Positions 5,690 to 56,382 of a DNA stretch of 64,000 nucleotides are shown here, piece after piece; position 1 is the first letter of the stretch; each line of letters begins with the position of its first letter. The stretch comes from Podarcis pityusensis (taxonomy: Eukaryota). The translations under genes were made by a program, and so were the position numbers. The stretch lies in NCBI GenBank assembly GCA_964106645.2, contig OZ067048.1; one strand, given 5' to 3'. The notes under the pieces are model-generated. The model was not told the origin of the DNA and made no database searches. It saw only the letters and a list, made by a program, of their open reading frames with translations.

Positions 5690-6038
5690 GGAAGTTTCAT
5701 CTATTGTTTAGCCTAATCTTGTTTCCTGAAACTTCCACCTGTTGGTTCTTGGTCTGCCCTCTGCAGAAACAAGCAGTAAGTCCGCTCCTTCTTTCTGCAT
5801 GACAGCCCCTCACCACCATAATGATGCCCCATATCCACCTTACCTTCTCCAGACTAATCATACCCAACTATTTCAACTGTTTGCTACATGACTTGGCTTC
5901 CAGATCCCACACCATCTTTGTTCCACCCTTTCGATGTGCTTCGTTTTGTCAATAACTTATTTAAAATATGTCACTCTTAATTGGATGCTGTATGTGGTCT
6001 GACCAGCAGGGAACAGAGCAAAACTATTTCCTCTTATG
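5690..6038 (-). mobile_element. Old CR1 LINE fragment that hosts the 6039-7725 insertion and continues at 7726-~7800
   Basis: Antisense CR1-like text (…TTAAAATATGTCACTC…TGTGGTCTGACCAGCAGGGAACAGAGC…ATTTCCTCTTATG|ATCTGGAC) is continuous across the TSD. Confidence 0.55.
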
Positions 6039-7725
6039 TTTTTTTTTTAAATGATATTTATTAAGATTTTCAAAGATACAGAAAGTAAAGATTAAAATAC
6101 ATTCAAAGCCTTATTTTCATAGATCCACTTTCCGGGACTCCCCCCTTCCCCCACCCCTACCATATTCCCCTTTCATATTGTTGGCTCCACAAGCTCTCAG
6201 TTCTAATTAAAACTTAATTTGTTTAAACCATTATTCGAATTTAAAATTTATACACTCCTCATCAATACCCTTAATAAAAAACAAAAGTTCTCTCCCCAGG
6301 GCCCACCCCATTTTCATTCCACAATTTCCCTTTTTTTTAAAAAATAAGGACACCCCACACAATAGAAATATAAGAAATAAGAAATAAAAAGTATAATAGG
6401 TGAAAAAGAGCCAGTTCAGAAAAAAAAAAAAGTTGACAAGCCTTTGGATTTTAGTTCTCCCCCCCCTGTCCCCGGTTTAATTTCCCCCTGACCACCAAAC
6501 CATGTTATCTGCCTGGAATTCTTAAAGTCCATAAATCACCTATTTCCCCCAACTCCTTGCTGGCTTTTTCTTTTTATAGTTATTTTTTAAGACATTTAAC
6601 TTCAAATCTTTAATAAAACTCCCCCCATTGTTCTTTCCAAGTTGTAGTCCAATTTCCTCTTGTTCCGCTGCTGAAACGTTCTAATTCAGAAGTTTAGTAA
6701 CTCTGCAGGGATTATTGTTATTCAGGAACAAAAACTTGCGTTCAGTCCCTTCCTTTCTTCAATAGAAAATTCTATTGTCTCCTTTAGCTGAACACCCTGT
6801 AGACAAAATATTATTTCCGTTTTGCAGCTTTCCCAGAAGATAACCAGTCCTGTAAAATTCCAATGGTATTTTTCCACTTACGACCATCTTTGTAATGTCC
6901 CGAAACTCCTCTAGGGGGATTGTTGTAACTTTGTTTTCTCTAGTCCAAAAGTCCGATTGTTATCCATGTTTTCGCCATTTTGTATCCAAGTTTTAACGGG
7001 TTATAGCAAATTGTAACAAATTTAACCAGCAAAGTTCTCATAATAAGATCCTCTCTGCTTTCCGACTTTGACAGCTACTTTGACAGCTGTCAAAATCTCC
7101 GACTCTTTTCACCAGGCTCTCTCTTCAATCACCCCGGTTCCCAGGGGGGGGGGTCACGTTTCCCTTCTCCCTCAATTCTTCCTCCAGCACAGTTCTTGTA
7201 GTTCCCCATCGTGGAATTCTTAGTTTTTATCAGCAATACAAATCTTTTTGGACCTTGGTTTCCACCATCCTTGTTTTGGAAGATTTACAGTAGGGAGGGG
7301 GACTGACTTCCTTTTTGGATCCCCCCCCCGCTCGTGTCCAATCCGAAAAAAAAATTTTTTTTTTTCCTCCTTTTGAACCCGGTTTCCAAATTACTCACGG
7401 GTTGTTGTTAAGAAGTCCGAATTTTCAATAGAAGAAGTCAGCGCTCTCCGCCAAATGGCATGCGGCTTCGCTCGGCAGGGATAGCAGAGGACTCAAAGCA
7501 CCACGCTTCTCCCCGGCACCCGATCCGTAGCCTTTAAAAAGGCTCCTTCACGAGTCGGGAGGGCGCTAGCGGTGCCAGCCGAGTCTCCATGTCCACGGCC
7601 TCCGTGGCCGTGGTTTTTAAGGGTCCCCGCATCGCCGGTGCGGTAGGACCCAGCCCCTGCCGAGCAGGCTCCCTCCGGAGCTCGGAGGGAGTCCGCCATT
7701 CGGCGATGGCGCCAACCCGGAAGTC
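6039..7725 (-). mobile_element. Full-length non-autonomous L1-derived retroposon, copy A (~1.69 kb)
   Basis: 20-bp TSD CAAAACTATTTCCTCTTATG (6019-6038, 7726-7745). CpG-rich 5' end GACTTCCGGGTTGGCGCC. 3' end AATAAATATCATTT+poly(A). No long ORF. Same termini as 30807-33505. Confidence 0.85.
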
Positions 7726-10093
7726 CAAAACTATTTCCTCTTATGATCTGGACTCTGTGCTTATGTTAACACAGCCTTACAAGTTCATCACGTTTTTTAT
7801 CAGCCACGTCAAGCTGCTTGACCTTCAACTGAGGCACTTAGCGCAACTTTGAATTCTTCCCTATTTTGAATGATTTGTCAGTGCAAGCTCTCCAGCTTGC
7901 CAAACCGGCAAAAGGGGGGGGGGGATATATAACAGCTCAGCTCAGGTGATCTAGGAGCTTGAACAAAGAGAAAAGAACAACCCAGCAAAGAGAAAATGAG
8001 TTCAAGCCATGAACTCATCCCAATAGCCACAGATCCATCCATCTTTGCCATTTACAACACACTCCTGTTGGCTCACTCTGGTCACTAATTTCCTGTAAAT
8101 GGACAGTGGTTTTTTTTTTTTTTTTACAGAGATGACCTGCCTCAGCTGTGGGCTTTTGGAAGAGATCCTATGCATACTGACTTTGAAGTAACTCCTTTTT
8201 AATTTCCATGGAAGATACTCCCAAGTAAATATTATTAGGACAGGTTTTATACTGAGCTAGTGGCCATTCATACAGCATAAAACCTACCTGATGGATTCTT
8301 TTCTGCCTTCACTTGCATTCTTTTCTCCCCCTCCCTGTAGTTTCTGGTTACACCCCCCCTTCAATTAACTTTTGCAATAATTATGTTGTTTTTTTAAAGT
8401 GCTTCAAGTGATACTCGTTTTCTAACTCTGAAGGTTTCTGAAGGAGGCAAGAATGGCCTTCTGAGCTGTTAAGACTCTGGAATAAAACAGTAAATCAAGT
8501 CACTGATATGACTTATATATCACATTAAACACAGGGAATCCACCACAAAATCATTACACTAAAAAGCGACACTTTTGATTGATTAAAATGGTTTGGGCTG
8601 GATAGTGTTAAATCACTGTGAGTGATGTGACATTACAGTTTTACATATCATATTTCTGTCAAGACAATGAAGGTAAAAGGCATTGTCATCAGACGATAAC
8701 GGACAATGAGAGGAACCCTTGTGTTAGATTTATGGCTTGGTTTAGATTTAGAAAGAAGTAATTCTTACCTTGTGCCACTTATCAAATGACTGTAAATTCA
8801 ATGATGATGTAAAATTCTAAGGCAGAGCCACTTAGAGTTTTGACAAAGTGCCAGCTATAAAGTATTTACTGTTCTCAATGGTTCTGCCTTGCACACTTAA
8901 ATATTTATCAGAATCATGGACCTTTCTGATAAATGTTCCTGATCTTTGCTGCTGTTTTTTTAAACTTGGATGGTTATTATTTTTAAACGGAAGTTGGCCT
9001 GGCATTTCTGTAACAATTCTAGCTATCTTAATTAAAATATTAAAAATACAGAAAAAGCTGGAGTTTTGCTTGCCAAGTAAATCTTCATAGTTTGTATAGC
9101 TGGCTGCCCTTGTAGTATCGGACTGCCCTAACTACACGAACTGGTCAGCATTGTGGGCATGGAGCATGGCTAAAGCCAGAGGTGTATCAGACTTCCCAGT
9201 TGTGATTTATGACTCTGCTGATAATTTCCCTGGCTTTTAATTTCAAAGACGTACCCATTCTCTGTGGTTGCGTTCAACAACATTGTTACTAACAATACAC
9301 ATTTTAATGATGGCATTTGCTAAAGTAAGATATGCTTAGCAGAACGCATATTTCAGAATGCATTATATCTCAGGGTGGTTTTCTGTATTCTCCTTAAGAA
9401 TATGGAAGTATATATTTCCATGTCTTATGAGGGCATGGAAATGTAGCATTGGAAGGATTGCATGTTCATCACACACAGAACTCTTAGAAACTTTTGGATA
9501 GCAATGTGACTTTTGGAACACATGCTTGTTGTCTTTTCCATCTTGAGATAGACGCCTGTTTCTTAGGTTTTGTGAATGCATCTGCTGAAGCCTGATCCAA
9601 GCAGAGTATTCTCTTTTGCTGCCTAGACTGATAGCTAACTGTGGTTAAACACAAATGAAATTTCATTCTCTTTATTGTATCTAAAGCCCAGTTGGTAGAC
9701 TCCTGACTTGGTGGAGTAAACTGGGTGGATGGCAACATGCTGCTCCAGCACCAAACCAGTAGGGTAGTCTAGAGCAATGGGTGACCCATCATCTCTCTTT
9801 CCCTCTCCTCCCCACCAGCTTATTAGTTACTTAGGGCAAGGGATGCAGTAGCCACACTGCCATCCATTCAGTATCTTCCTTGGCATTTTTAGCCTGTTTC
9901 CTCATCTAATCTCCCAGGCTTTTAAAGACTCAGGAGCATAGCATAAGTAGGGAAACAGTCACCCCTTGAGTGTATCCAGAAACCAGTACAGTTCACAAAT
10001 CCAACTAAGCTGTCTGTTTAAGGGACGTATAGCACAATGGGGTGTGTGTGTGGATTGAGTATGCACAAAGAAAAGGAAAGTAAAACACTAAAC

Positions 10094-12900: not shown

Positions 12901-15031
12901 AAAAGTTTGCTCTAATTCAACAGCGTTATATTGCTTTGAACACAAGTAGGATTTTTATGCTGAATAATAGCTTTATGTAGAATTTCTGCAGCCATAATTC
13001 TTTCTCCAGGCCTTTCAGTAGCTGCACTGGAGGACTACAGGTTGTTTTTTAAATTACATTTTCCATGCCATTTAGTGCTCCAAGGCCCATGTGCTGAAAA
13101 TGAAAATTTAAGAAAGTTCCCATGGCCTGGATGAATTTCTGATGAATAGAAAAGGGTGAGTTGCATCTCCCTGACCCTCGGCTGCATTTCTACCCCTCTG
13201 CAGCTTCAGTGACATCAAAGGTTACAGATTGTTTTGAATGAATAGAGGCCTTTATGAACTATGCCTGTTCAGCACAGGAGAACCTGGTGGCAGTCATTTC
13301 ATATCAGGAGAACTGGCAGTATTTGGGATTTTCTTTTTAAAATAACGTGATATTCAAAGCAAAAAATCAGTCCCTTGGGAATATTTCTTTGGGGAAATAC
13401 TCCCGAGTGTCAAATTTATTCTGACTTTCTTACTGCTCTAAATGGAAGTGAGTTGAAAATTGTCCTGTTAAAAAAACTTGGGAGCTTTCAGAAAACCTCC
13501 CACAAATGGAACTTTTCATTTCCTCCTCCTTTTAGTTCTAAGCCCTTTTGTTTCACCCCTCTGCTGCTGTTTTGGCACCTTATTCTTCTCACTGCTTGAT
13601 TTCAATCAGTTTGTAGATTACATAGTCAGCAAGACGATGCCTGCACCCACCCACCAAATCAGATAACCTGTTCAATACCACTGAGGGCATGCAAAGAATG
13701 GCTGGCTCCAGCTCCGACGTGATGTATCTCCATTGCATGCAGAAGACTCCCAGGTTCAATCCCAGACATGTCCAGCTTAGGGATGGGGAAGATTCCTGGA
13801 GAGCCATTGCCAATCAGTGTTTCATTTCCATTGGTTCATCCCAAAAAGGCAGTTTCCTATGTTCCTAAATGAAGCAGCACTGGGCTTTGGAGAAGAGGGG
13901 AATTTGCCTCAGAATTGCTGAGGCAACTGTGTGACAGTCCCTGCTCTTTTCCACTATGGTGGCAGAATCATTGGAGCATTGCTGAGTGCCTCCACAATGC
14001 AAAGATGCACTCCATTTTCCTGTCACAGCCCAACACATGGGCATTTCTGCTCTGATTGTGTTACCCCCCCCCCAAATGATCACCCAAATGGATGCTATTT
14101 TTCCCCCTCACAGGACCTGAAAGTTTTATTAAAAAGGAAAGAAAGAAGCTTTCCTCTCTGGGCAGCTTTTAATACATCGAAAGTTAGATAAGGTGGATCT
14201 TGTTATAGAGGTTTATAGCGTAAGATGCAATTTGTTTGTCATTTTGAGATGGAAGGGAGAAAATGTGAGTTGTCATCAAACATATGGCTACTCATCATAA
14301 GCAAGGTACTTAGATGGATAAATAGATTTATGAAGGGAAACTGTGCTCAGAGAGCTGTTTGACCCTGAAGTGGTAACTTTTGATCAAAATATATCTATCT
14401 TTTTCTTTTACTTATTGAGATATCCTCTTCCCTGAAATGCTAAAATCTGTTGTTGTCCTGTTTCCCACTGCCTTAATCAGCAACAATGAGCATTAAACCC
14501 TTCAAATTGTGGTTTTACACTGAAGAAACACAAATGTTTAGAAGGTATATAAAGCCATATGGTGACATCCCCTCTCTAACGCTAGGTGTCACTGCAGGAC
14601 TGAGAGAGCACTTAACTGGAGACGTTAATAATAATACCTCTTATTTCCTGGTCTGGTCCTCTTAGGTTTCTCCCTCAAAGAAGAGAGCAGAGTAGCAGAG
14701 ACTGTAGACATAGCAGTCACAGTACTTTCAAAATGAGAATATTAAAAAGAAGGTTGTTTGTAGTAGTTGTCCCACCCCCAATGTCAAGCTATAAGAGTAC
14801 CTTATTCAACAAAATCATTTAAAAGATGCTGCTGTTCTGAAGTTACTAATAGATTTATCTAGTGAAAAACAGAGTGTCATTTCTCGAACAAGGAAATTCT
14901 AAAATCTCACTTCCCATGTATGTGTGTGTGTACATGTGTGTACACGTGTGTGTGTGTTTGTGTTGTGTCTGCAAGCTGAGATGTGCTTTCAGTGGTTCTG
15001 CATCCCTGTAGCATGTATGCTCAATGCAAAT

Positions 15032-25518: not shown

Positions 25519-25997
25519 CTTTGTTGTTTAGTCGTTTAGTCGTGTCCTACTCTTCGTGACCCCATGGACCAGAACACGCCAGGCACTCCTGTCTTCCACT
25601 GCCTCCCGCAGTTTGGTCAAACTCATGTTGGTAGCTTCAAGAACACTGTCCAACCATCTCATCCTCTTTCGTCCCCTTCTCCTTGGGGACCAAGGAGGAT
25701 CTTTCCCAACATCAGGGTCTTTTATAGGGAGTCTTCTCTTCTCATGAGGTGGCCAAAGTATTGGAGCCTCAGATTCAGGATCTGTCCTTCCAGTGAGCAC
25801 TCAGGGCTGATTTCCTTAAGAATAGATCGGTTTGATCTTCTTGCAGTCCATGGGACTCTCAAGAGTCTCCTCCAGCACCATAATTCAAAAGCATCAATTC
25901 TTCGGCGATCAGCCTTCTTTATGGTCCAGCTCTCACTTCCATACATCACTACTAGGAAAACCATAGCTGTAACTATATGGACCTTTGTCGGCAAGGT
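25519..25997 (-). mobile_element. BovB (RTE) LINE 3' fragment
   Basis: Encodes YGSESWTIKKADRRRIDAFELWCWRRLLRVPWTARRSN…LQYFGHLMRR…WRVLVHGVTKSRTRLND, with a (CAA)n-type tail. Confidence 0.95.
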
Positions 25998-30271: not shown

Positions 30272-30539
30272 CTCTAAAGGCTCTTTCACAAAAATTTTTG
30301 CAGGAGAATGTGTCATATATTCAGCTCTTGGGGTAAGATTTACATTTCTTGGGCCATGAGTAACTAGGAATATTGGCAAGAGTATGACTATGTGTAGGGA
30401 ACTAGTTTATATTGTGCACACGGTTGCACGTCTAGTACCATCTCAAAACCAGAGAAGATGGCTTCTTCACCAAACTGGAAGTTCAAGAGAGGCTTTTCTC
30501 TCTATAAATTATAGGATGGTGGAAAACCTACATCCTACC

Positions 30540-30806
30540 TTTGGTTTTCCCAGTAGTGATGTATGGAAGTGAGAGCTGGACCATAAAGAAGGCTGATCAC
30601 CGGAGAATTGATGCTTTTGAATTATGGTGCTGGAGGAGACTCTTGAGAGCCCCATGGACTGCAAGAAGATCAAACCTATCCATTCTTAAGGAATCAGCCC
30701 TGAGTGCTCACTGGAAGGACAGATCCTGAAGCTGAGGCTCCAATACTTTGGCCACCTCATGAGAAGAGAAGACTCCCTGGAAAGACCCTGATGTTGGGAA
30801 AGATGG
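30540..30806 (+). mobile_element. BovB (RTE) 3' fragment, left part, split by insertion
   Basis: Encodes VFPVVMYGSESWTIKKADHRRIDAFELWCWRRLLR and resumes at 33506. Outer TSD-like CCTTTGGTT at 30538-30546 and 33691-33699. Confidence 0.95.
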
Positions 30807-33505
30807 GACTTCTGGGTTGGCGCCTCTGGCAATGGCGGATTTCCTCCGATCGGGAGGAATCCGCTCCGTGGAAAAAAGGGTCTGAACCGCCATGGCGAGG
30901 CGGAGACCCATCAAAAACCACAGGCGGGAGAAGCGTGTGGACGTGGGATTCGGCTGGCACCTTTGCGCCCCCCCTACTCGCGGGGAACCCCGGTTTCGGG
31001 GATCCGGAGCGACGTGGGGTGAGTGGCGCGGTGCCTTGAATCGACTGCTTCTTTCACGGAGTGAAGCCGCATTGCTGTTGCCGGAGAGCGCTGACTTTTT
31101 CCTGTGGACAATTGGATCTTAAATAACTGTCCGTGAGTAGAACGGAAAATTGGATTAAGAAATTTCTTTTAATTTGACACTGAAGTGGGAAGGTGTAAAC
31201 AGGAAGACCGCCTTCCGCTTTTTGTAGATAGATTAAAGCAAAGACACGGCAAGCTAGAGTTTAGAAAGTCGTCCGTAAAGGATCAATTTTCATCATTTAA
31301 AATTACTGAACCCCCCTTGGAAGCAGGAGAAGAGGGGGGAACTTTTTCTGGACTGTTTAAACCTGCAGAAGAGAGTATAAAGAAAAGCAATTTTCCACCG
31401 TCTTGAACCTGGGAGCGGGGTGTCAGGACAGACATCTTTGGGAAGTTCATTGACTATAGACAAACATTTTTGACAGATAGTTAAAAGAAGAGAGACATAG
31501 TGATTCCATTGTTCCCCTTCGCATCTAAAAGGAACAAAATATTGACAAAATATCTGAAAAAGGAAACTTTGTTGTTAGATCTGCTTTAAAAAAAAAAAAA
31601 AGAGATGGATACAAATAGAAGCTTTTTCCCCTAGAGGGAGCATGAGAAACTGTTATTAAATCTGAACTGGGGAGCTTTGCAGCTGCAATAGATTAAGATC
31701 GTGGGATCAGACTCTGACCTTGCACAAGAATGTACTCGGAGGCTCTGGTGCTTGCCTTCTGCAAGACAAGTGCTTTATTGGAACAGTTACATGAAAAGAC
31801 GGATTTGATGACTGTTGCGATTGGAAATTTTGGACAAGCAGTGGGTATCTATATAGAACCCACTCAGGAATTAATCCAGGAGTGTGCTCTGACCAGATGA
31901 GGGAGGAGGTTGTTGCTGGACCTCGGGAGGCAGAGATGGAGGGAACTGTGGCCCAGCAGGAACATGAGTTGTTGGATCTGACGAATGAACCTGGAAAAAG
32001 CCAGATTTGGAGAGATAGAGTCTTGTTTGGCTTGGAGATGGGGGGCTGGATAGACCCCCCTATGCAGGGATGTTTTGACTTTTCAAGTCTGGCTTTGGGC
32101 CGGGAGGAGTTCGGAGTTGTGGGGGCCCTTAACTTTGGAGGGTCCACAGATTTTCCAAGGGTTTGGTGTCTCCGCTATGCGTGTGTGACGGGAAAACTGT
32201 TGATTCTCTCCCACATATAATGTTCAACTGTCCCCTACATAGCATAGCCAGGACTAAATTCCTGGGTCCTGCTTTACTGCGCTTGGTTGGCAGGCCTGCT
32301 GAGTCACATGCCGCACTACTTTTGCAGGATACAGATCCTTCTGTAACTCTGCAGGTGGCGAGATTCCTGAATGCGGTTATCTCACACACAAAAACCACCA
32401 AAAACAACAACATCAAAAACTAATCGGACAGTTTTGAAGAGAGTGCATGTCGGATCTCGTCTTCAGTTTTCCTTTTTCTGGGATCCGTCCCTTGGAGCTC
32501 TCCGGGCCCCAAGCTGTTATCTGGCTCTGCTCAATGACCCACCCCTGCATCATGGTGTTCACCTTCTGGTGCCGAATATATCGGTCCTTATGCCTCTGTG
32601 CTTTTATGTTTGTACATACTTTATGGGCTAATAGCCGTAAATAAATAAATAAACAAATAAATAAATAAATAAATAACTTTGGAAGGACCTTGAAACATGC
32701 TTTTAAATACCACATGGAGTTCATTGTTGACTATGGAAAAGGGGCTGATCTGTTGAGAAGGGACAAAAATATCGTCAAGCTGGAGTCTCCACGAATGAAA
32801 GGAGCAGAAGACAAAGTAAAATACAGGTATAAACATGAAGAAGACCTGCGGAAGGGACATGGAAGAGATTTAAGGGCCTCGGACATAAGGTCACCGGGTT
32901 GATGAGCTAGATGGATGGGATAGAAAGGACTGACAAAACCCGAGACCAGGAGGAAGAGACGTTGGATGAAGATTGGAAGAAAGTTTTTAAAAAATTTATT
33001 TAGGAAAGTTTTGTAAAATTAATGAGTATTAGAAAAATGTTGGAACGAAACTATTTGTCTTTAGCAGAAATGTTAAAAAGAATTATGTAAGAATATGTTA
33101 TGGTTATGAGAAATTGGTATAAATAAGATTTAAGTTTTAAGTTTTAGGGTTTTTTATGGTAAGATAAGGTTAAAATAGATTAAGGTAATTTAATGACAGA
33201 ATATTATGAAAGATGAAAAGGATTTGCTGAGATAATTAACAACTAGAATACAAAAAAGGGAGGTGTGAGGAGGTCGATGAAATAAGGCAATGACAGTTAA
33301 GGATTTGAGAATACTGGATCTGTTTTTAAATTTTTTTGTTTATTTCTGCTTTTTGATTTTGATGTATGATGTGTTTTGCTTTTGCTTTTTGATTTTGCTT
33401 TTTATCGATTTGTATTGTTTAATTGTTATCTGTTTTTTTCTTCTTTTCTTCTTTGTTTTTTTTGTAATCTTAAAATTCTCAATAAATATCATTTAAAAAA
33501 AAAAA
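30807..33505 (+). mobile_element. Full-length non-autonomous L1-derived retroposon, copy B (~2.7 kb including nested insert)
   Basis: 14-bp TSD GTTGGGAAAGATGG (30793-30806, 33506-33519). 5' end GACTTCTGGGTTGGCGCC. 3' end AATAAATATCATTT+poly(A). Only short ORF1-like and ORF2-C-terminal-like remnants (…RDQEEETLDEDWKK…). Confidence 0.85.
32146..32673 (+). mobile_element. RTE-X-like LINE 3' fragment nested in copy B
   Basis: Encodes RFSKGLVSPLCVCDGKTVDSLPHIMFNCPLHSIARTKFL…LLLQDTDPSVTLQVARFL (CxC..H..CP zinc knuckle). 3' GGCTAATAGCC hairpin, then (TAAA)n tail. Flanks TAACTTTGGAGGGTCC / TAACTTTGGAAGGACC are a putative TSD. Confidence 0.7.
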
Positions 33506-33691
33506 GTTGGGAAAGATGGAGGGCACAAGGAGAAGGGGACGACAGAGGACAAGATGGTTGTGTAGTGTTCTCGAAGCTATGAACATGAGTTTGACCAAAC
33601 TGCGGGAGGCAGTGGAAGACAGGAGTGCCTGGCGTGCTCTGGTCCATGGGGTCACGAAGAGTCGGACACGACTAAACAACTAAACAACAAC
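33506..33691 (+). mobile_element. BovB (RTE) 3' fragment, right part
   Basis: Continues the 30540-30806 copy through GTCACGAAGAGTCGGACACGACTAAAC and a (CAA) tail. Confidence 0.95.
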
Positions 33692-35672: not shown

Positions 35673-36042
35673 TATGGTGTTGGAGGAGACTCTTGAGAGT
35701 CCCATGGACTGCAAGAAGACCAAACCTATCCATTCTTAAGAAAATCAGCCCTGAGTGCTCACTGGAAGGACAGATCCTGAAGCTGAGGCTCCAATACTTT
35801 GGCCACCTCATGAGAAGAGAAGACTGCCTGGAAAAGACCCTGATGTTGGGAAAGATGGAGGGCACAAGGAGAAGGGGATGACAGAGGATGAGATGGTTGG
35901 ACAGTGTTCTTGAAGCTACCAGCATGAGTTTGACCAAACTGCGGGAGGCAGTGGAAGACAGGAGTGCCTGGCGTGCTCTGGTCCATGGAGTCACGAAGTG
36001 TCAGACACGACTAAATGACTAAACAACAACAACAAGAACAAC
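35673..36042 (+). mobile_element. BovB (RTE) 3' fragment
   Basis: Encodes RVPWTARRPNLSILKKISPECSLEGQILKLRLQYFGHLMRREDCLEKTLMLGKMEG. (CAA)n tail. Near-TSD AAGCATGCATA / AAGCATGGATA. Confidence 0.95.
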
Positions 36043-45692: not shown

Positions 45693-45872
45693 NNNNNNNN
45701 NNNNNNNNNNNNNNNNNNNNNNNNNNNNNNNNNNNNNNNNNNNNNNNNNNNNNNNNNNNNNNNNNNNNNNNNNNNNNNNNNNNNNNNNNNNNNNNNNNNN
45801 NNNNNNNNNNNNNNNNNNNNNNNNNNNNNNNNNNNNNNNNNNNNNNNNNNNNNNNNNNNNNNNNNNNNNNNN
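45693..45872. other. Assembly gap (180 N)
   Basis: Run of N. Confidence 1.
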
Positions 45873-56210: not shown

Positions 56211-56382
56211 NNNNNNNNNNNNNNNNNNNNNNNNNNNNNNNNNNNNNNNNNNNNNNNNNNNNNNNNNNNNNNNNNNNNNNNNNNNNNNNNNNNNNNNNNN
56301 NNNNNNNNNNNNNNNNNNNNNNNNNNNNNNNNNNNNNNNNNNNNNNNNNNNNNNNNNNNNNNNNNNNNNNNNNNNNNNNNNN
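56211..56382. other. Assembly gap (172 N)
   Basis: Run of N. Confidence 1.

What the first reader, a model, noticed from the sequence alone, without database searches (positions are those of the whole stretch)
7391..7725. Covarying multi-hairpin RNA structure in the 5' leader of the L1-derived elements
Seen when aligning copy A (minus, 7725-7391) with copy B (30807-31140). H1: CTCCCTCCG/CGGAGGGAG vs GCGGATT(T)CCTCC/GGAGGAATCCGC. H2: GGGTCC-CCGCA-[CCGGCGA]-TGCGG-GGACCC vs GGGTCT-CCGCC-[ATGGCGA]-GGCGG-AGACCC, two compensatory pair changes and a conserved GGCGA loop. H3: CCACGGCC/GGCCGTGG vs CCACA..GC/GC..TGTGG after a shared AAAAA linker. H4: long stem closed by GACTC/GAGTC vs GATTC/GAATC (compensatory) and GGCACC/GGTGC(T/C), capped by an inner hairpin whose sequence is fully replaced (AGCCTTT/AAAGGCT vs CCCCG/CGGGG). 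Inference: selection acts on the RNA fold. It could be an undescribed cis-element that recruits ribosomes or L1 ORF2p (as the Alu domain does), an IRES, or a 5' ribozyme (HDV-like ribozymes are known at 5' ends of R2, L1Tc and some RTE elements).
Basis: partly seen in the sequence, partly recalled or inferred. Interest (0 to 1): 0.82.

Follow-up and report, generated by a model that had tools for sequence, protein, structure and literature searches.

The report
Folded 5' leader of lizard retroposons
Two diverged copies of a lizard L1-type retroposon start with the same ~330-nt CpG-rich promoter/leader, and its RNA is predicted to fold into the same closed multi-helix domain despite about 30% sequence change; this points to selection on the fold, but its function is untested.

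Summary
Copy A (minus strand, 7725-7392) and copy B (30807-31139) are the first ~334 nt of two complete retroposed units. Each unit has target-site duplications and an AATAAA signal followed by a poly(A) tail. The units share only this leader (about 70% identity) and their last ~60 nt.

Each leader folds far better than dinucleotide shuffles (z -6.6 and -6.5). Keeping the changed columns but re-dealing the replacement letters loses about 32 kcal/mol (0 of 400 reach the real value, in either direction). P3 alone has 5 double compensations in 12 bp (0 of 400 nulls reach even 4).

The raw count of compensatory pairs is not significant on its own (12 against a null of 8.8±2.4). Only three sequences could be gathered, so no R-scape-grade test was possible.

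The leader starts with GACTTCCGG…ATGGCG, the published 5' terminus of Anolis clade-1 L1 5'UTRs. It is a CpG island, so it is also an internal promoter. Rfam gives no ribozyme, SRP or other match. An IRES is unlikely because A-type copies have no ORF.

The scan has noted related element families elsewhere in this genome, but not the fold.

The parts
6039..7725 (-). Element A: a complete 1.69-kb retroposed unit with no ORF, ending in AATAAA and an A10 tail
   Evidence: Read directly. No ORF of 100 aa or more. A second copy at another locus, L001, aligns along the whole unit.
7726..7745 (-). Upstream target-site duplication of A (20 bp); its twin is at 6019-6038
   Evidence: Identical 20-mers flank the unit.
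7392..7725 (-). Leader A (334 nt): a CpG island that starts with GACTTCCGG
   Evidence: GC 0.54-0.70 and CpG o/e 0.88-1.05. MFE -171.8 kcal/mol, z -6.65. 95-97% identical to L001 over the first 280 nt, against roughly 67-91% (mostly ~80%) in the body.
7437..7716 (-). Conserved folded core of A: P2 (7712-7695 with 7459-7441), H1 (7694-7667), P3 (7666-7654 with 7481-7469), H2 (7651-7621), H3 (7613-7593), H4 (7588-7486)
   Evidence: Helix lists and base-pair probabilities; consensus fold.
7392..7400 (-). Invariant CCGTGAGTA at the 3' edge of the leader. It looks like a 5' splice site or U1 site. It pairs with the 5' end only in A-type copies.
   Evidence: Identical in A, B and L001. The P1 pairing probability is 0.9 in A but 0.03 in B.
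30807..33505 (+). Element B: a complete 2.70-kb composite retroposed unit inserted in a BovB-like repeat, ending in AATAAA and an A11 tail
   Evidence: Read directly. The interrupted repeat was rebuilt from the intact copy at 35673-36030.
30793..30806 (+). Upstream target-site duplication of B (14 bp); its twin is at 33506-33519
30807..31139 (+). Leader B (333 nt): a CpG island that starts with GACTTCTGG
   Evidence: About 70% identical to leader A, depending on how gaps are counted: blastn 70.7%; 224 of 329 aligned columns, or 68%. MFE -167.1 kcal/mol, z -6.51. CpG o/e 0.88-1.14.
30814..31097 (+). Conserved folded core of B: P2 (30814-30836 with 31074-31097), H1 (30837-30862), P3 (30863-30873 with 31052-31062), H2 (30878-30909), H3 (30918-30940), H4 (30943-31048)
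31131..31139 (+). Invariant CCGTGAGTA at the 3' edge of leader B
33444..33504 (+). The 3'-terminal module shared with A (A: 6097-6039). It is the only other homology between the two units.
   Evidence: blastn 79% over 61 nt; 85% over 46 nt.
32133..32420 (+). Decayed C-terminal (CxC…H…C) piece of a LINE ORF2 inside B
   Evidence: 50-52% identical to the C-termini of Podarcis RT-domain proteins and of a 218-aa orphan ORF.

Best explanation
The 334-nt leader is the 5'-terminal module of a lizard L1-type 5'UTR, carried here by two non-autonomous retroposon lineages. It works at two levels.

As DNA it is an internal Pol II promoter. It is a CpG island with an ETS-type ACTTCCGG at the first bases, a YY1-like ATGGCGG core at about +27 and a RUNX-like AACCAC(A/G) at about +110. 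This lets every new full-length copy be transcribed from its own first base.

As RNA, nt ~9-292 fold into one closed domain. Two long-range helices (P2, P3) enclose four hairpins (H1-H4). The base pairs have been kept by compensatory change while the two lineages diverged by about 30%.

I think the fold most likely acts after transcription, as a compact handle on the 5' end. It would hold the first AUG inside helices, stabilise the RNA, and display a few invariant unpaired motifs to a protein partner. Those motifs are the GGCGA loop, the A-rich linker and the GAAGCCGCAU junction. That would help an ORF-less RNA to persist and to be taken up by a LINE machinery in trans. It is not a self-cleaving ribozyme.

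Shown here: the element boundaries, the shared architecture, the excess stability, the compensation, the CpG island and the 5' motif. Inferred: promoter activity, Pol II transcription from +1, and any post-transcriptional role.
For: - TSDs and poly(A) tails define two complete units that begin at the same base. L001, a third copy elsewhere, begins at that point minus its first G.
- The units share only the leader and the last ~60 nt.
- Between A and L001 the first 280 nt of the leader are 95-97% identical, against roughly 67-91% (mostly ~80%) in the body.
- Fold z is -6.65 and -6.51. The rest of both elements shows no comparable signal.
- The same helices are predicted independently in each copy, with probabilities above 0.9.
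- Substitutions re-dealt over all columns: pseudo-B folds at -131.9±6.1 against the real -167.1, and shares 5.6±5.9 bp with A's fold against the real 40.
- Same changed columns, letters re-dealt: -134.8±6.0, 0 of 400; the reciprocal test is also 0 of 400.
- RNAalifold energy z is -5.0 and -7.7 against the two nulls.
- P3 has 5 doubles in one 12-bp stack, against a null maximum of 3 in 400.
- With the structure taken from A alone and the alignment from sequence alone: 10 doubles against 4.8 (P=0.013), and 25 broken pairs against 35 (P=0.004).
- The sense consensus is better than the antisense one: -108 kcal/mol and 96 bp against -85 and 74 bp.
- CpG o/e is 0.9-1.1.
- The published Anolis clade-1 L1 5' end is GACTTCCGGTGN8ATGGCG, with 5'UTRs conserved across families and a CpG island at the start (PMC5381506).
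- YY1 and RUNX3 sites are known in the human L1 5'UTR (PMC3286893).
Against: - There are only two diverged sequences plus one near-duplicate.
- The total count of double changes is not above the null.
- A versus L001 carries no signal.
- With structures taken from single sequences, paired and unpaired positions differ equally often.
- The sense/antisense difference is largely compositional: shuffles differ by 21 kcal/mol in B, against 28 for the real sequence.
- Local hairpins whose sequence was replaced wholesale (the H4 tip) could arise in one mutational step and inflate the permutation z.
- Promoter need alone would explain why non-autonomous elements keep the leader.
- No autonomous L1 with this leader was found in about 101 kb of five lizard loci.
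Confidence: 0.6

Rival explanations
1. Promoter only. The leader is conserved as DNA (a CpG island with ETS, YY1-like and RUNX-like boxes), and the predicted RNA fold is a by-product of GC-rich, partly palindromic binding sites.
For: CpG o/e is about 1. Motifs sit at the first bases, as in the published L1 5' ends. The two arms of P2a are invariant, so they give no covariation. Paired and unpaired positions diverge equally when the structure is taken from one sequence.
Against: Dinucleotide shuffles control for composition, yet z is about -6.5. With the changed positions held fixed, the actual replacement letters still save about 32 kcal/mol (0 of 400). The two arms of P3 lie about 185 nt apart and changed together at 5 of 12 pairs, which binding sites do not predict.
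Confidence: 0.2
2. Mutational origin. Template switching or hairpin-templated repair within inverted repeats produced paired changes in single events, without selection on an RNA.
For: The H4 tip and parts of H3 were replaced wholesale by new short palindromes. That is the footprint such events leave (established knowledge of template-switch mutations).
Against: It does not explain scattered double changes in the long-range P3, or the register-shifted but still paired P2b. Both lineages stayed mobile: they have intact TSDs and tails, and their CpGs are undecayed.
Confidence: 0.07
3. Translation element. The domain is an IRES or shunt structure that lets ribosomes reach a downstream ORF despite a cap-proximal fold of about -170 kcal/mol.
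For: A stable structure that starts at nt 3-9 should block cap-dependent scanning (established knowledge). B-type relatives carry a ~218-aa ORF.
Against: A-type units keep the first 280 nt of the leader at 95-97% but have no ORF. In B the ORF remnant starts about 650-1000 nt after the leader. The uORF from the first AUG is 68 aa in A and 17 aa in B.
Confidence: 0.06
4. Exon-like head. The leader is a captured first exon, and the invariant CCGTGAGTA is a working U1 site or 5' splice site. It would be used for splicing, or to suppress premature polyadenylation in the A-rich body. The fold would be secondary.
For: The 9-mer is identical in A, B and L001 although the 35 nt before it vary. It is paired in A-type copies only, so pairing does not explain its invariance.
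Against: Position -1 is C, not G. Weak homology continues about 100 nt past it. No RNA data could be obtained.
Confidence: 0.05
5. 5' self-cleaving ribozyme (HDV-like, as in R2, L1Tc and RTE elements) that defines the 5' end of the RNA.
For: All copies begin at the same base.
Against: No ribozyme family matches at E up to 10 in either copy. No complement to the first 7 nt exists for a P1 helix (read). An ETS/YY1-type start in a CpG island explains the fixed 5' end.
Confidence: 0.02

Closest known systems
5'UTR of Anolis carolinensis clade-1 L1 families (Boissinot & Sookdeo 2016, PMC5381506)
   Same: The first bases are GACTTCCGG, followed by an ATGGCG box. There is a CpG island at the 5' extremity. 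The 5'UTR is conserved across otherwise very diverged families.
   Different: The spacing to ATGGCG is longer here (+27 rather than about +20). The carriers here are short non-autonomous units. That paper reads the conservation as transcription signals and reports no RNA fold for the 5'UTR.
Human L1 5'UTR internal promoter (YY1 box at the start, RUNX3 site; Athanikar 2004 as cited in PMC3286893)
   Same: An internal Pol II promoter inside the transcript, with a YY1-type core near +1 and a RUNX-type motif about 100 nt in.
   Different: There is no sequence homology. No conserved closed multi-helix domain is described for the human 5'UTR.
HDV-like ribozymes at the 5' ends of R2, L1Tc and RTE elements
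   Same: A structured RNA at the very 5' end of a non-LTR element, and a fixed 5' terminus.
   Different: No covariance-model match, no P1 partner for the first bases, and promoter motifs are present instead.
Alu/7SL Alu-domain and other SINE heads
   Same: The possible logic is shared: a folded 5' module that lets a non-coding RNA use LINE proteins in trans.
   Different: No similarity to SRP RNA (Rfam). The architecture is Pol II type, with a TTTTT run inside A's H4 tip. The module is about 285 nt and appears to come from the LINE's own 5'UTR rather than from a small RNA gene.
HAL1 ('half-L1') and similar internally deleted L1 derivatives
   Same: Non-autonomous units that keep the ends of a LINE and retropose with TSDs and poly(A).
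   Different: A-type units have no ORF1. B is a composite that holds a piece of a different LINE's ORF2 C-terminus and 3'UTR.

Membership tests
L1 (LINE-1) 5'UTR, lizard clade-1 type | 5' terminus GACTTCCGG followed by ATGGCG | tested here: met
   A starts GACTTCCGG and B starts GACTTCTGG. ATGGCG lies at +27 to +32 in both. The consensus comes from PMC5381506. The spacing differs from the published N8.
L1 (LINE-1) 5'UTR, lizard clade-1 type | CpG island at the 5' extremity | tested here: met
   GC 0.54-0.70 and CpG o/e 0.88-1.14 over nt 1-334, falling to generally lower but variable values further along the elements.
L1 (LINE-1) 5'UTR, lizard clade-1 type | L1-type integration: TSD and a poly(A) tail after AATAAA | tested here: met
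   20-bp and 14-bp TSDs; A10 and A11 tails.
L1 (LINE-1) 5'UTR, lizard clade-1 type | The same leader heads an autonomous element with L1 ORF1 (Transposase_22) and ORF2 | tested here: inconclusive
   No such ORFs in the window. Pfam finds nothing in the bodies of A and B. None of five lizard loci (about 101 kb) holds the leader. The Podarcis LINE related to B's ORF2 piece has a different 5' end and an ORF1 with no Pfam match.
HDV-like self-cleaving ribozyme | Match to the HDV / CPEB3 / drz covariance models (nested double pseudoknot) | tested here: not met
   No hit at gathering score or at E up to 10 on either leader.
HDV-like self-cleaving ribozyme | P1 helix formed by the first ~7 nt downstream of the cleavage site | tested here: not met
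   No GAAGU(C/U) complement to GGACUUC or GACUUCC in either leader (sequences).
SINE head derived from tRNA, 7SL or 5S (Pol III) | Similarity to the parent small RNA | tested here: not met
   No Rfam match.
SINE head derived from tRNA, 7SL or 5S (Pol III) | No internal Pol III terminator | tested here: not met
   There is a TTTTT run inside A's H4 tip.
IRES | Placed just upstream of the ORF it serves, with internal initiation activity | tested here: not met
   No ORF follows in A or L001. In B the ORF remnant is at least 650 nt downstream. Initiation activity itself cannot be tested with these tools.
Evolutionarily conserved structured RNA (general criteria) | Stability beyond composition, and the same architecture in diverged homologues | tested here: met
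   z -6.65 and -6.51. Same helices with probability above 0.9. Permutation nulls give 0 of 300-400.
Evolutionarily conserved structured RNA (general criteria) | Statistically significant covariation in a deep alignment (R-scape type) | not testable with these tools
   Only three sequences could be gathered. The total number of double changes is not above the null. Only P3 stands out by itself.

The most novel reading that the evidence does not exclude
The ~285-nt closed domain is an autonomous RNA 'entry ticket', a functional analogue of the Alu domain but born from the LINE's own 5'UTR. It would dock ORF-less transcripts onto the ribosome or the LINE ORF2 protein, and so create whole families of Pol II-transcribed, kilobase-long non-autonomous retroposons in lizards.
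Probability: 0.12. Interest if true: 0.8.

Novelty: new variant of a known kind. Interest (0 to 1): 0.55.

Why it matters
L1 5'UTRs are usually treated as fast-evolving promoters. In lizards they are unusually conserved across old families, and so far this has been read only as shared transcription signals. A base-paired domain kept by compensatory change would add an RNA-level constraint that could explain that conservation. It would also give a concrete, mutable element (P3, P2b) for testing how non-mammalian LINE RNAs, and the ORF-less elements that parasitise them, are stabilised, translated or packaged. If the fold proves incidental, the finding reduces to two copies of a known type of promoter head.

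Tried and rejected
- More leader copies from pseudo-proteins: word searches with translations of the leader gave one extra A-type copy (P0001/L001) and nothing for B. B's ORF2 piece also gave nothing.
- More leader copies from the exhaustive search: it led to Podarcis, Phrynocephalus and Elgaria loci. None holds the leader. Two look-ups had no record, and one place was returned without DNA (withheld).
- DNA pattern scans: two metagenome scans found nothing. The bacterial-genome scan gave more than 120 exact 18-mer hits, but none has extended similarity, so they are chance or a conserved bacterial gene.
- Rfam: nothing at gathering score, and only noise at E up to 10.
- Pfam: nothing on body pieces of A and B.
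- Coding reading of the leader: rejected, because the uORF is 68 aa in A and L001 but 17 aa in B.
- Tests that gave no signal: the total count of double changes; A versus L001 substitutions; divergence of paired versus unpaired positions with single-sequence structures.
- The apparent 80% versus 52% identity on the RNAalifold consensus is a selection artefact.
- Strand test: only weakly informative.
- P1 pairing of the first bases with CCGUGAGU: rejected as a conserved feature, because it is absent from B's ensemble.
- The count of structure pairs was not used, because it needs a long typed structure string. Equivalent counts and controls were run in scripts.
- Published Anolis L1 consensus sequences are not held as text, so they could not be compared.
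Full report
**What is at the coordinates**

Reading both strands shows that the two "copies" are the heads of two complete retroposed units.

- Unit A lies on the minus strand from 7725 to 6039. It ends in AATAAA plus ten A's and is flanked by a perfect 20-bp duplication (7745-7726 and 6038-6019).
- Unit B lies on the plus strand from 30807 to 33505. It ends in AATAAA plus eleven A's and is flanked by a 14-bp duplication (30793-30806 and 33506-33519). It splits a BovB-like repeat whose intact relative is at 35673-36030.
- Both units start with GACTTC(C/T)GG.
- A self-comparison finds only two shared segments: the first ~334 nt (about 70% identical) and the last ~60 nt (79-85%).
- No further copy exists in the window.
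- A third copy came from a Logan contig (L001). It is an A-type unit at a different locus and lacks only the first G of the shared 5' end. Against A, the first 280 nt of its leader are 95-97% identical, while its body ranges from roughly 67 to 91% (mostly ~80%).

**Is the fold real?**

- Each leader was folded alone. A gives -171.8 kcal/mol (z -6.65) and B gives -167.1 (z -6.51) against dinucleotide shuffles, and no shuffle does as well.
- Sliding windows show no comparable signal in the rest of either unit, where most windows lie within about 2 sd of their shuffles.
- The two minimum-energy structures were predicted independently and have the same plan.
P3 is A 61-73 with 246-258, and B 58-68 with 247-257. 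P2 is A 15-32 with 268-286, and B 9-31 with 269-292.
- All of these helices have pairing probabilities above 0.9 in both ensembles, except the outer half of B's H1 (0.67).
- The conserved core is therefore nt ~9-292 (window 7716-7437 and 30814-31097).
- A terminal pairing of the first bases with the invariant CCGUGAGU is predicted for A-type copies (0.9) but not for B (0.03). I do not count it as conserved.

**Is it more than chance or shared ancestry?**

With two sequences, counting compensatory pairs is treacherous, and I found exactly that. The RNAalifold consensus has 96 pairs with 12 double changes. Alignments in which B's substitutions were re-dealt give 8.8±2.4 doubles, so the raw count means little.

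Other measures do discriminate.

1. B's observed substitutions were re-dealt over all columns, keeping the substitution matrix. The result folds at -131.9±6.1 (minimum -156.8) against the real -167.1. It shares 5.6±5.9 pairs with A's fold, against 40 observed.
2. The stricter control keeps the same 105 changed columns and permutes only which replacement letter goes where. It gives -134.8±6.0 (0 of 400). The reciprocal test on A also gives 0 of 400.
3. The consensus energy z is -5.0 against that null and -7.7 against column shuffling.
4. A's fold alone was scored on B through a sequence-only alignment. It keeps 10 doubles against 4.8 expected (P=0.013) and breaks 25 pairs against 35 expected (P=0.004).
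5. P3 is an uninterrupted 12-bp helix whose arms lie about 185 nt apart. Eight of its pairs differ between A and B, five of them on both sides. No null alignment reached even four doubles in one stack (0 of 400).

Honest negatives:

- A versus L001 adds nothing: 13 substitutions, permutation P=0.5.
- With structures taken from single sequences, paired and unpaired positions diverge equally (69% versus 65% identity). The 80% versus 52% contrast seen on the consensus is a selection artefact.
- The sense strand gives a better consensus than the antisense (-108 versus -85 kcal/mol; 96 versus 74 pairs). Much of that follows from G/U content.

**What the leader is**

- It is a CpG island: GC 0.54-0.70 and CpG o/e about 0.9-1.1. 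CpG o/e is generally lower, though variable, further along both units.
- Its start, GACTTCCGG followed by ATGGCG, is the 5' terminus published for Anolis clade-1 L1 families. Their long 5'UTRs are unusually conserved across families and begin with a CpG island. Zebrafish L1s start with GGACTTCCGGTT (PMC5381506).
- That paper reads the conservation as transcription signals. It reports RNA folding only for the inter-ORF spacer.
- The ATGGCGG core resembles a YY1 box, and the conserved unpaired AACCAC(A/G) resembles a RUNX site. Both factor types act on the human L1 5'UTR (PMC3286893). These motif readings are resemblance only.
- So the leader is best read as an L1-type internal promoter that is also transcribed.
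- The link to L1 proper is incomplete. The bodies of A and B match no Pfam family, and the window has no LINE ORFs.
- B contains a decayed ORF2 C-terminal piece (32133-32420). It is 50-52% identical to RT-domain proteins of Podarcis and to a 218-aa orphan ORF.
- The corresponding Podarcis element has an APE endonuclease and an RT. Its best solved relatives are human L1 ORF2p, only slightly ahead of R2.
- That Podarcis element has a different, short 5' end and a microsatellite tail. B is therefore a composite.
- About 101 kb from five lizard loci contains no homologue of the leader.

**Function**

- Ribozyme: Rfam has no match at gathering score or at E up to 10 on either leader. No segment can pair with the first seven bases as an HDV-type P1 requires. 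The fixed 5' end is explained by a promoter that starts transcription at its own first base.
- SRP or Alu-domain relationship: no match.
- Coding: the first AUG lies in the ATGGCGG box and opens 68 codons in A and L001 but only 17 in B, so the leader is not coding.
- IRES: A-type units have no ORF, yet keep the leader better than anything else. That argues against an IRES as the reason for retention.
- What remains is a dual-use module. The DNA is a promoter, which every non-autonomous Pol II retroposon must carry. The RNA is a compact closed domain that buries the first AUG and displays a few invariant unpaired motifs.
- I favour a post-transcriptional role in RNA stability and entry into the LINE ribonucleoprotein. 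This step is inference.
- The invariant CCGTGAGTA at the 3' edge (7400-7392; 31131-31139) is not explained by conserved pairing. It looks like a U1 site or 5' splice site, and I could not test it.

**Rivals**

- A promoter-only reading fails to explain the fixed-position permutation result and P3.
- Template-switch mutation could have produced the wholesale replacement of the H4 tip. That may inflate the energy statistics, but it does not explain scattered long-range compensation.

**Limits**

- Only three sequences could be gathered.
- No read-level data are available.
- The two N runs (45693-45872, 56211-56382) were left untouched.

**Verdict**

Selection on the fold is probable but not proven. 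The suggested ribozyme is disfavoured and the IRES unlikely, while ORF2p or ribosome recruitment remains open. I class it as a new variant of a known kind: a structured cis-element inside a known type of LINE 5'UTR. Interest is moderate.

Noticed in passing
window 30539-30806 + 33506-33691; also 35673-36030 and 25521-25966: BovB-like repeat copies, 92-96% alike. One of them is split by the insertion of unit B, which gives a clean empty-site comparison for B's 14-bp TSD.
   Followed up: partly
window 32133-32677: Inside B: an ORF2 C-terminal CxC…H…C piece, followed by a 3'UTR that ends in an (AAATA)n run (32640-32677). Its last bases resemble the 3' end of a Podarcis LINE (L125 about 12920-12966). 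After that, B continues for 830 AT-rich nt to the A-type tail. B looks like a fusion of at least two retroposon parts that moved as one unit.
   Followed up: partly
L125 7886-12966 (Podarcis muralis): A full-length LINE (515-aa ORF1 with no Pfam match; 1118-aa ORF2 with APE endonuclease and RT) that ends in a (TTCTT)n tail. It is flanked by a direct repeat of about 160 bp (7725-7885 and 12967-13127), which is very long for a target-site duplication.
   Followed up: partly
window 7699-7493 (minus); 30833-30886 (plus): The first AUG of the transcript sits in the YY1-like box. It opens a 68-codon uORF in A and L001 but a 17-codon one in B. In every copy it is buried in helix P2b.
   Followed up: yes
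window 6039-6097 and 33444-33504: A and B share their last ~60 nt (…AATAAATATCATTT plus poly(A)) although their bodies are unrelated. This may be a 3' recognition or polyadenylation module needed for mobilisation.
   Followed up: no
L005-L124 (bacterial genomes): The 18-mer GACTTCCGGGTTGGCGCC occurs exactly in more than 120 bacterial assemblies, mostly Pseudomonas and Xanthomonadales/Lysobacterales. The similarity does not extend further, so it is presumably a conserved bacterial gene segment and is unrelated.
   Followed up: partly
L002 336-992 (Logan contig); P0002: An intact 218-aa ORF whose C-terminal 80 residues are the LINE ORF2 zinc-knuckle-like domain. It matches the '218-aa ORF' that first readers noted in non-autonomous elements elsewhere in this genome.
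   Followed up: no
window 45693-45872 and 56211-56382: Two runs of N (180 and 172 bases). They were left as they are.
   Followed up: no
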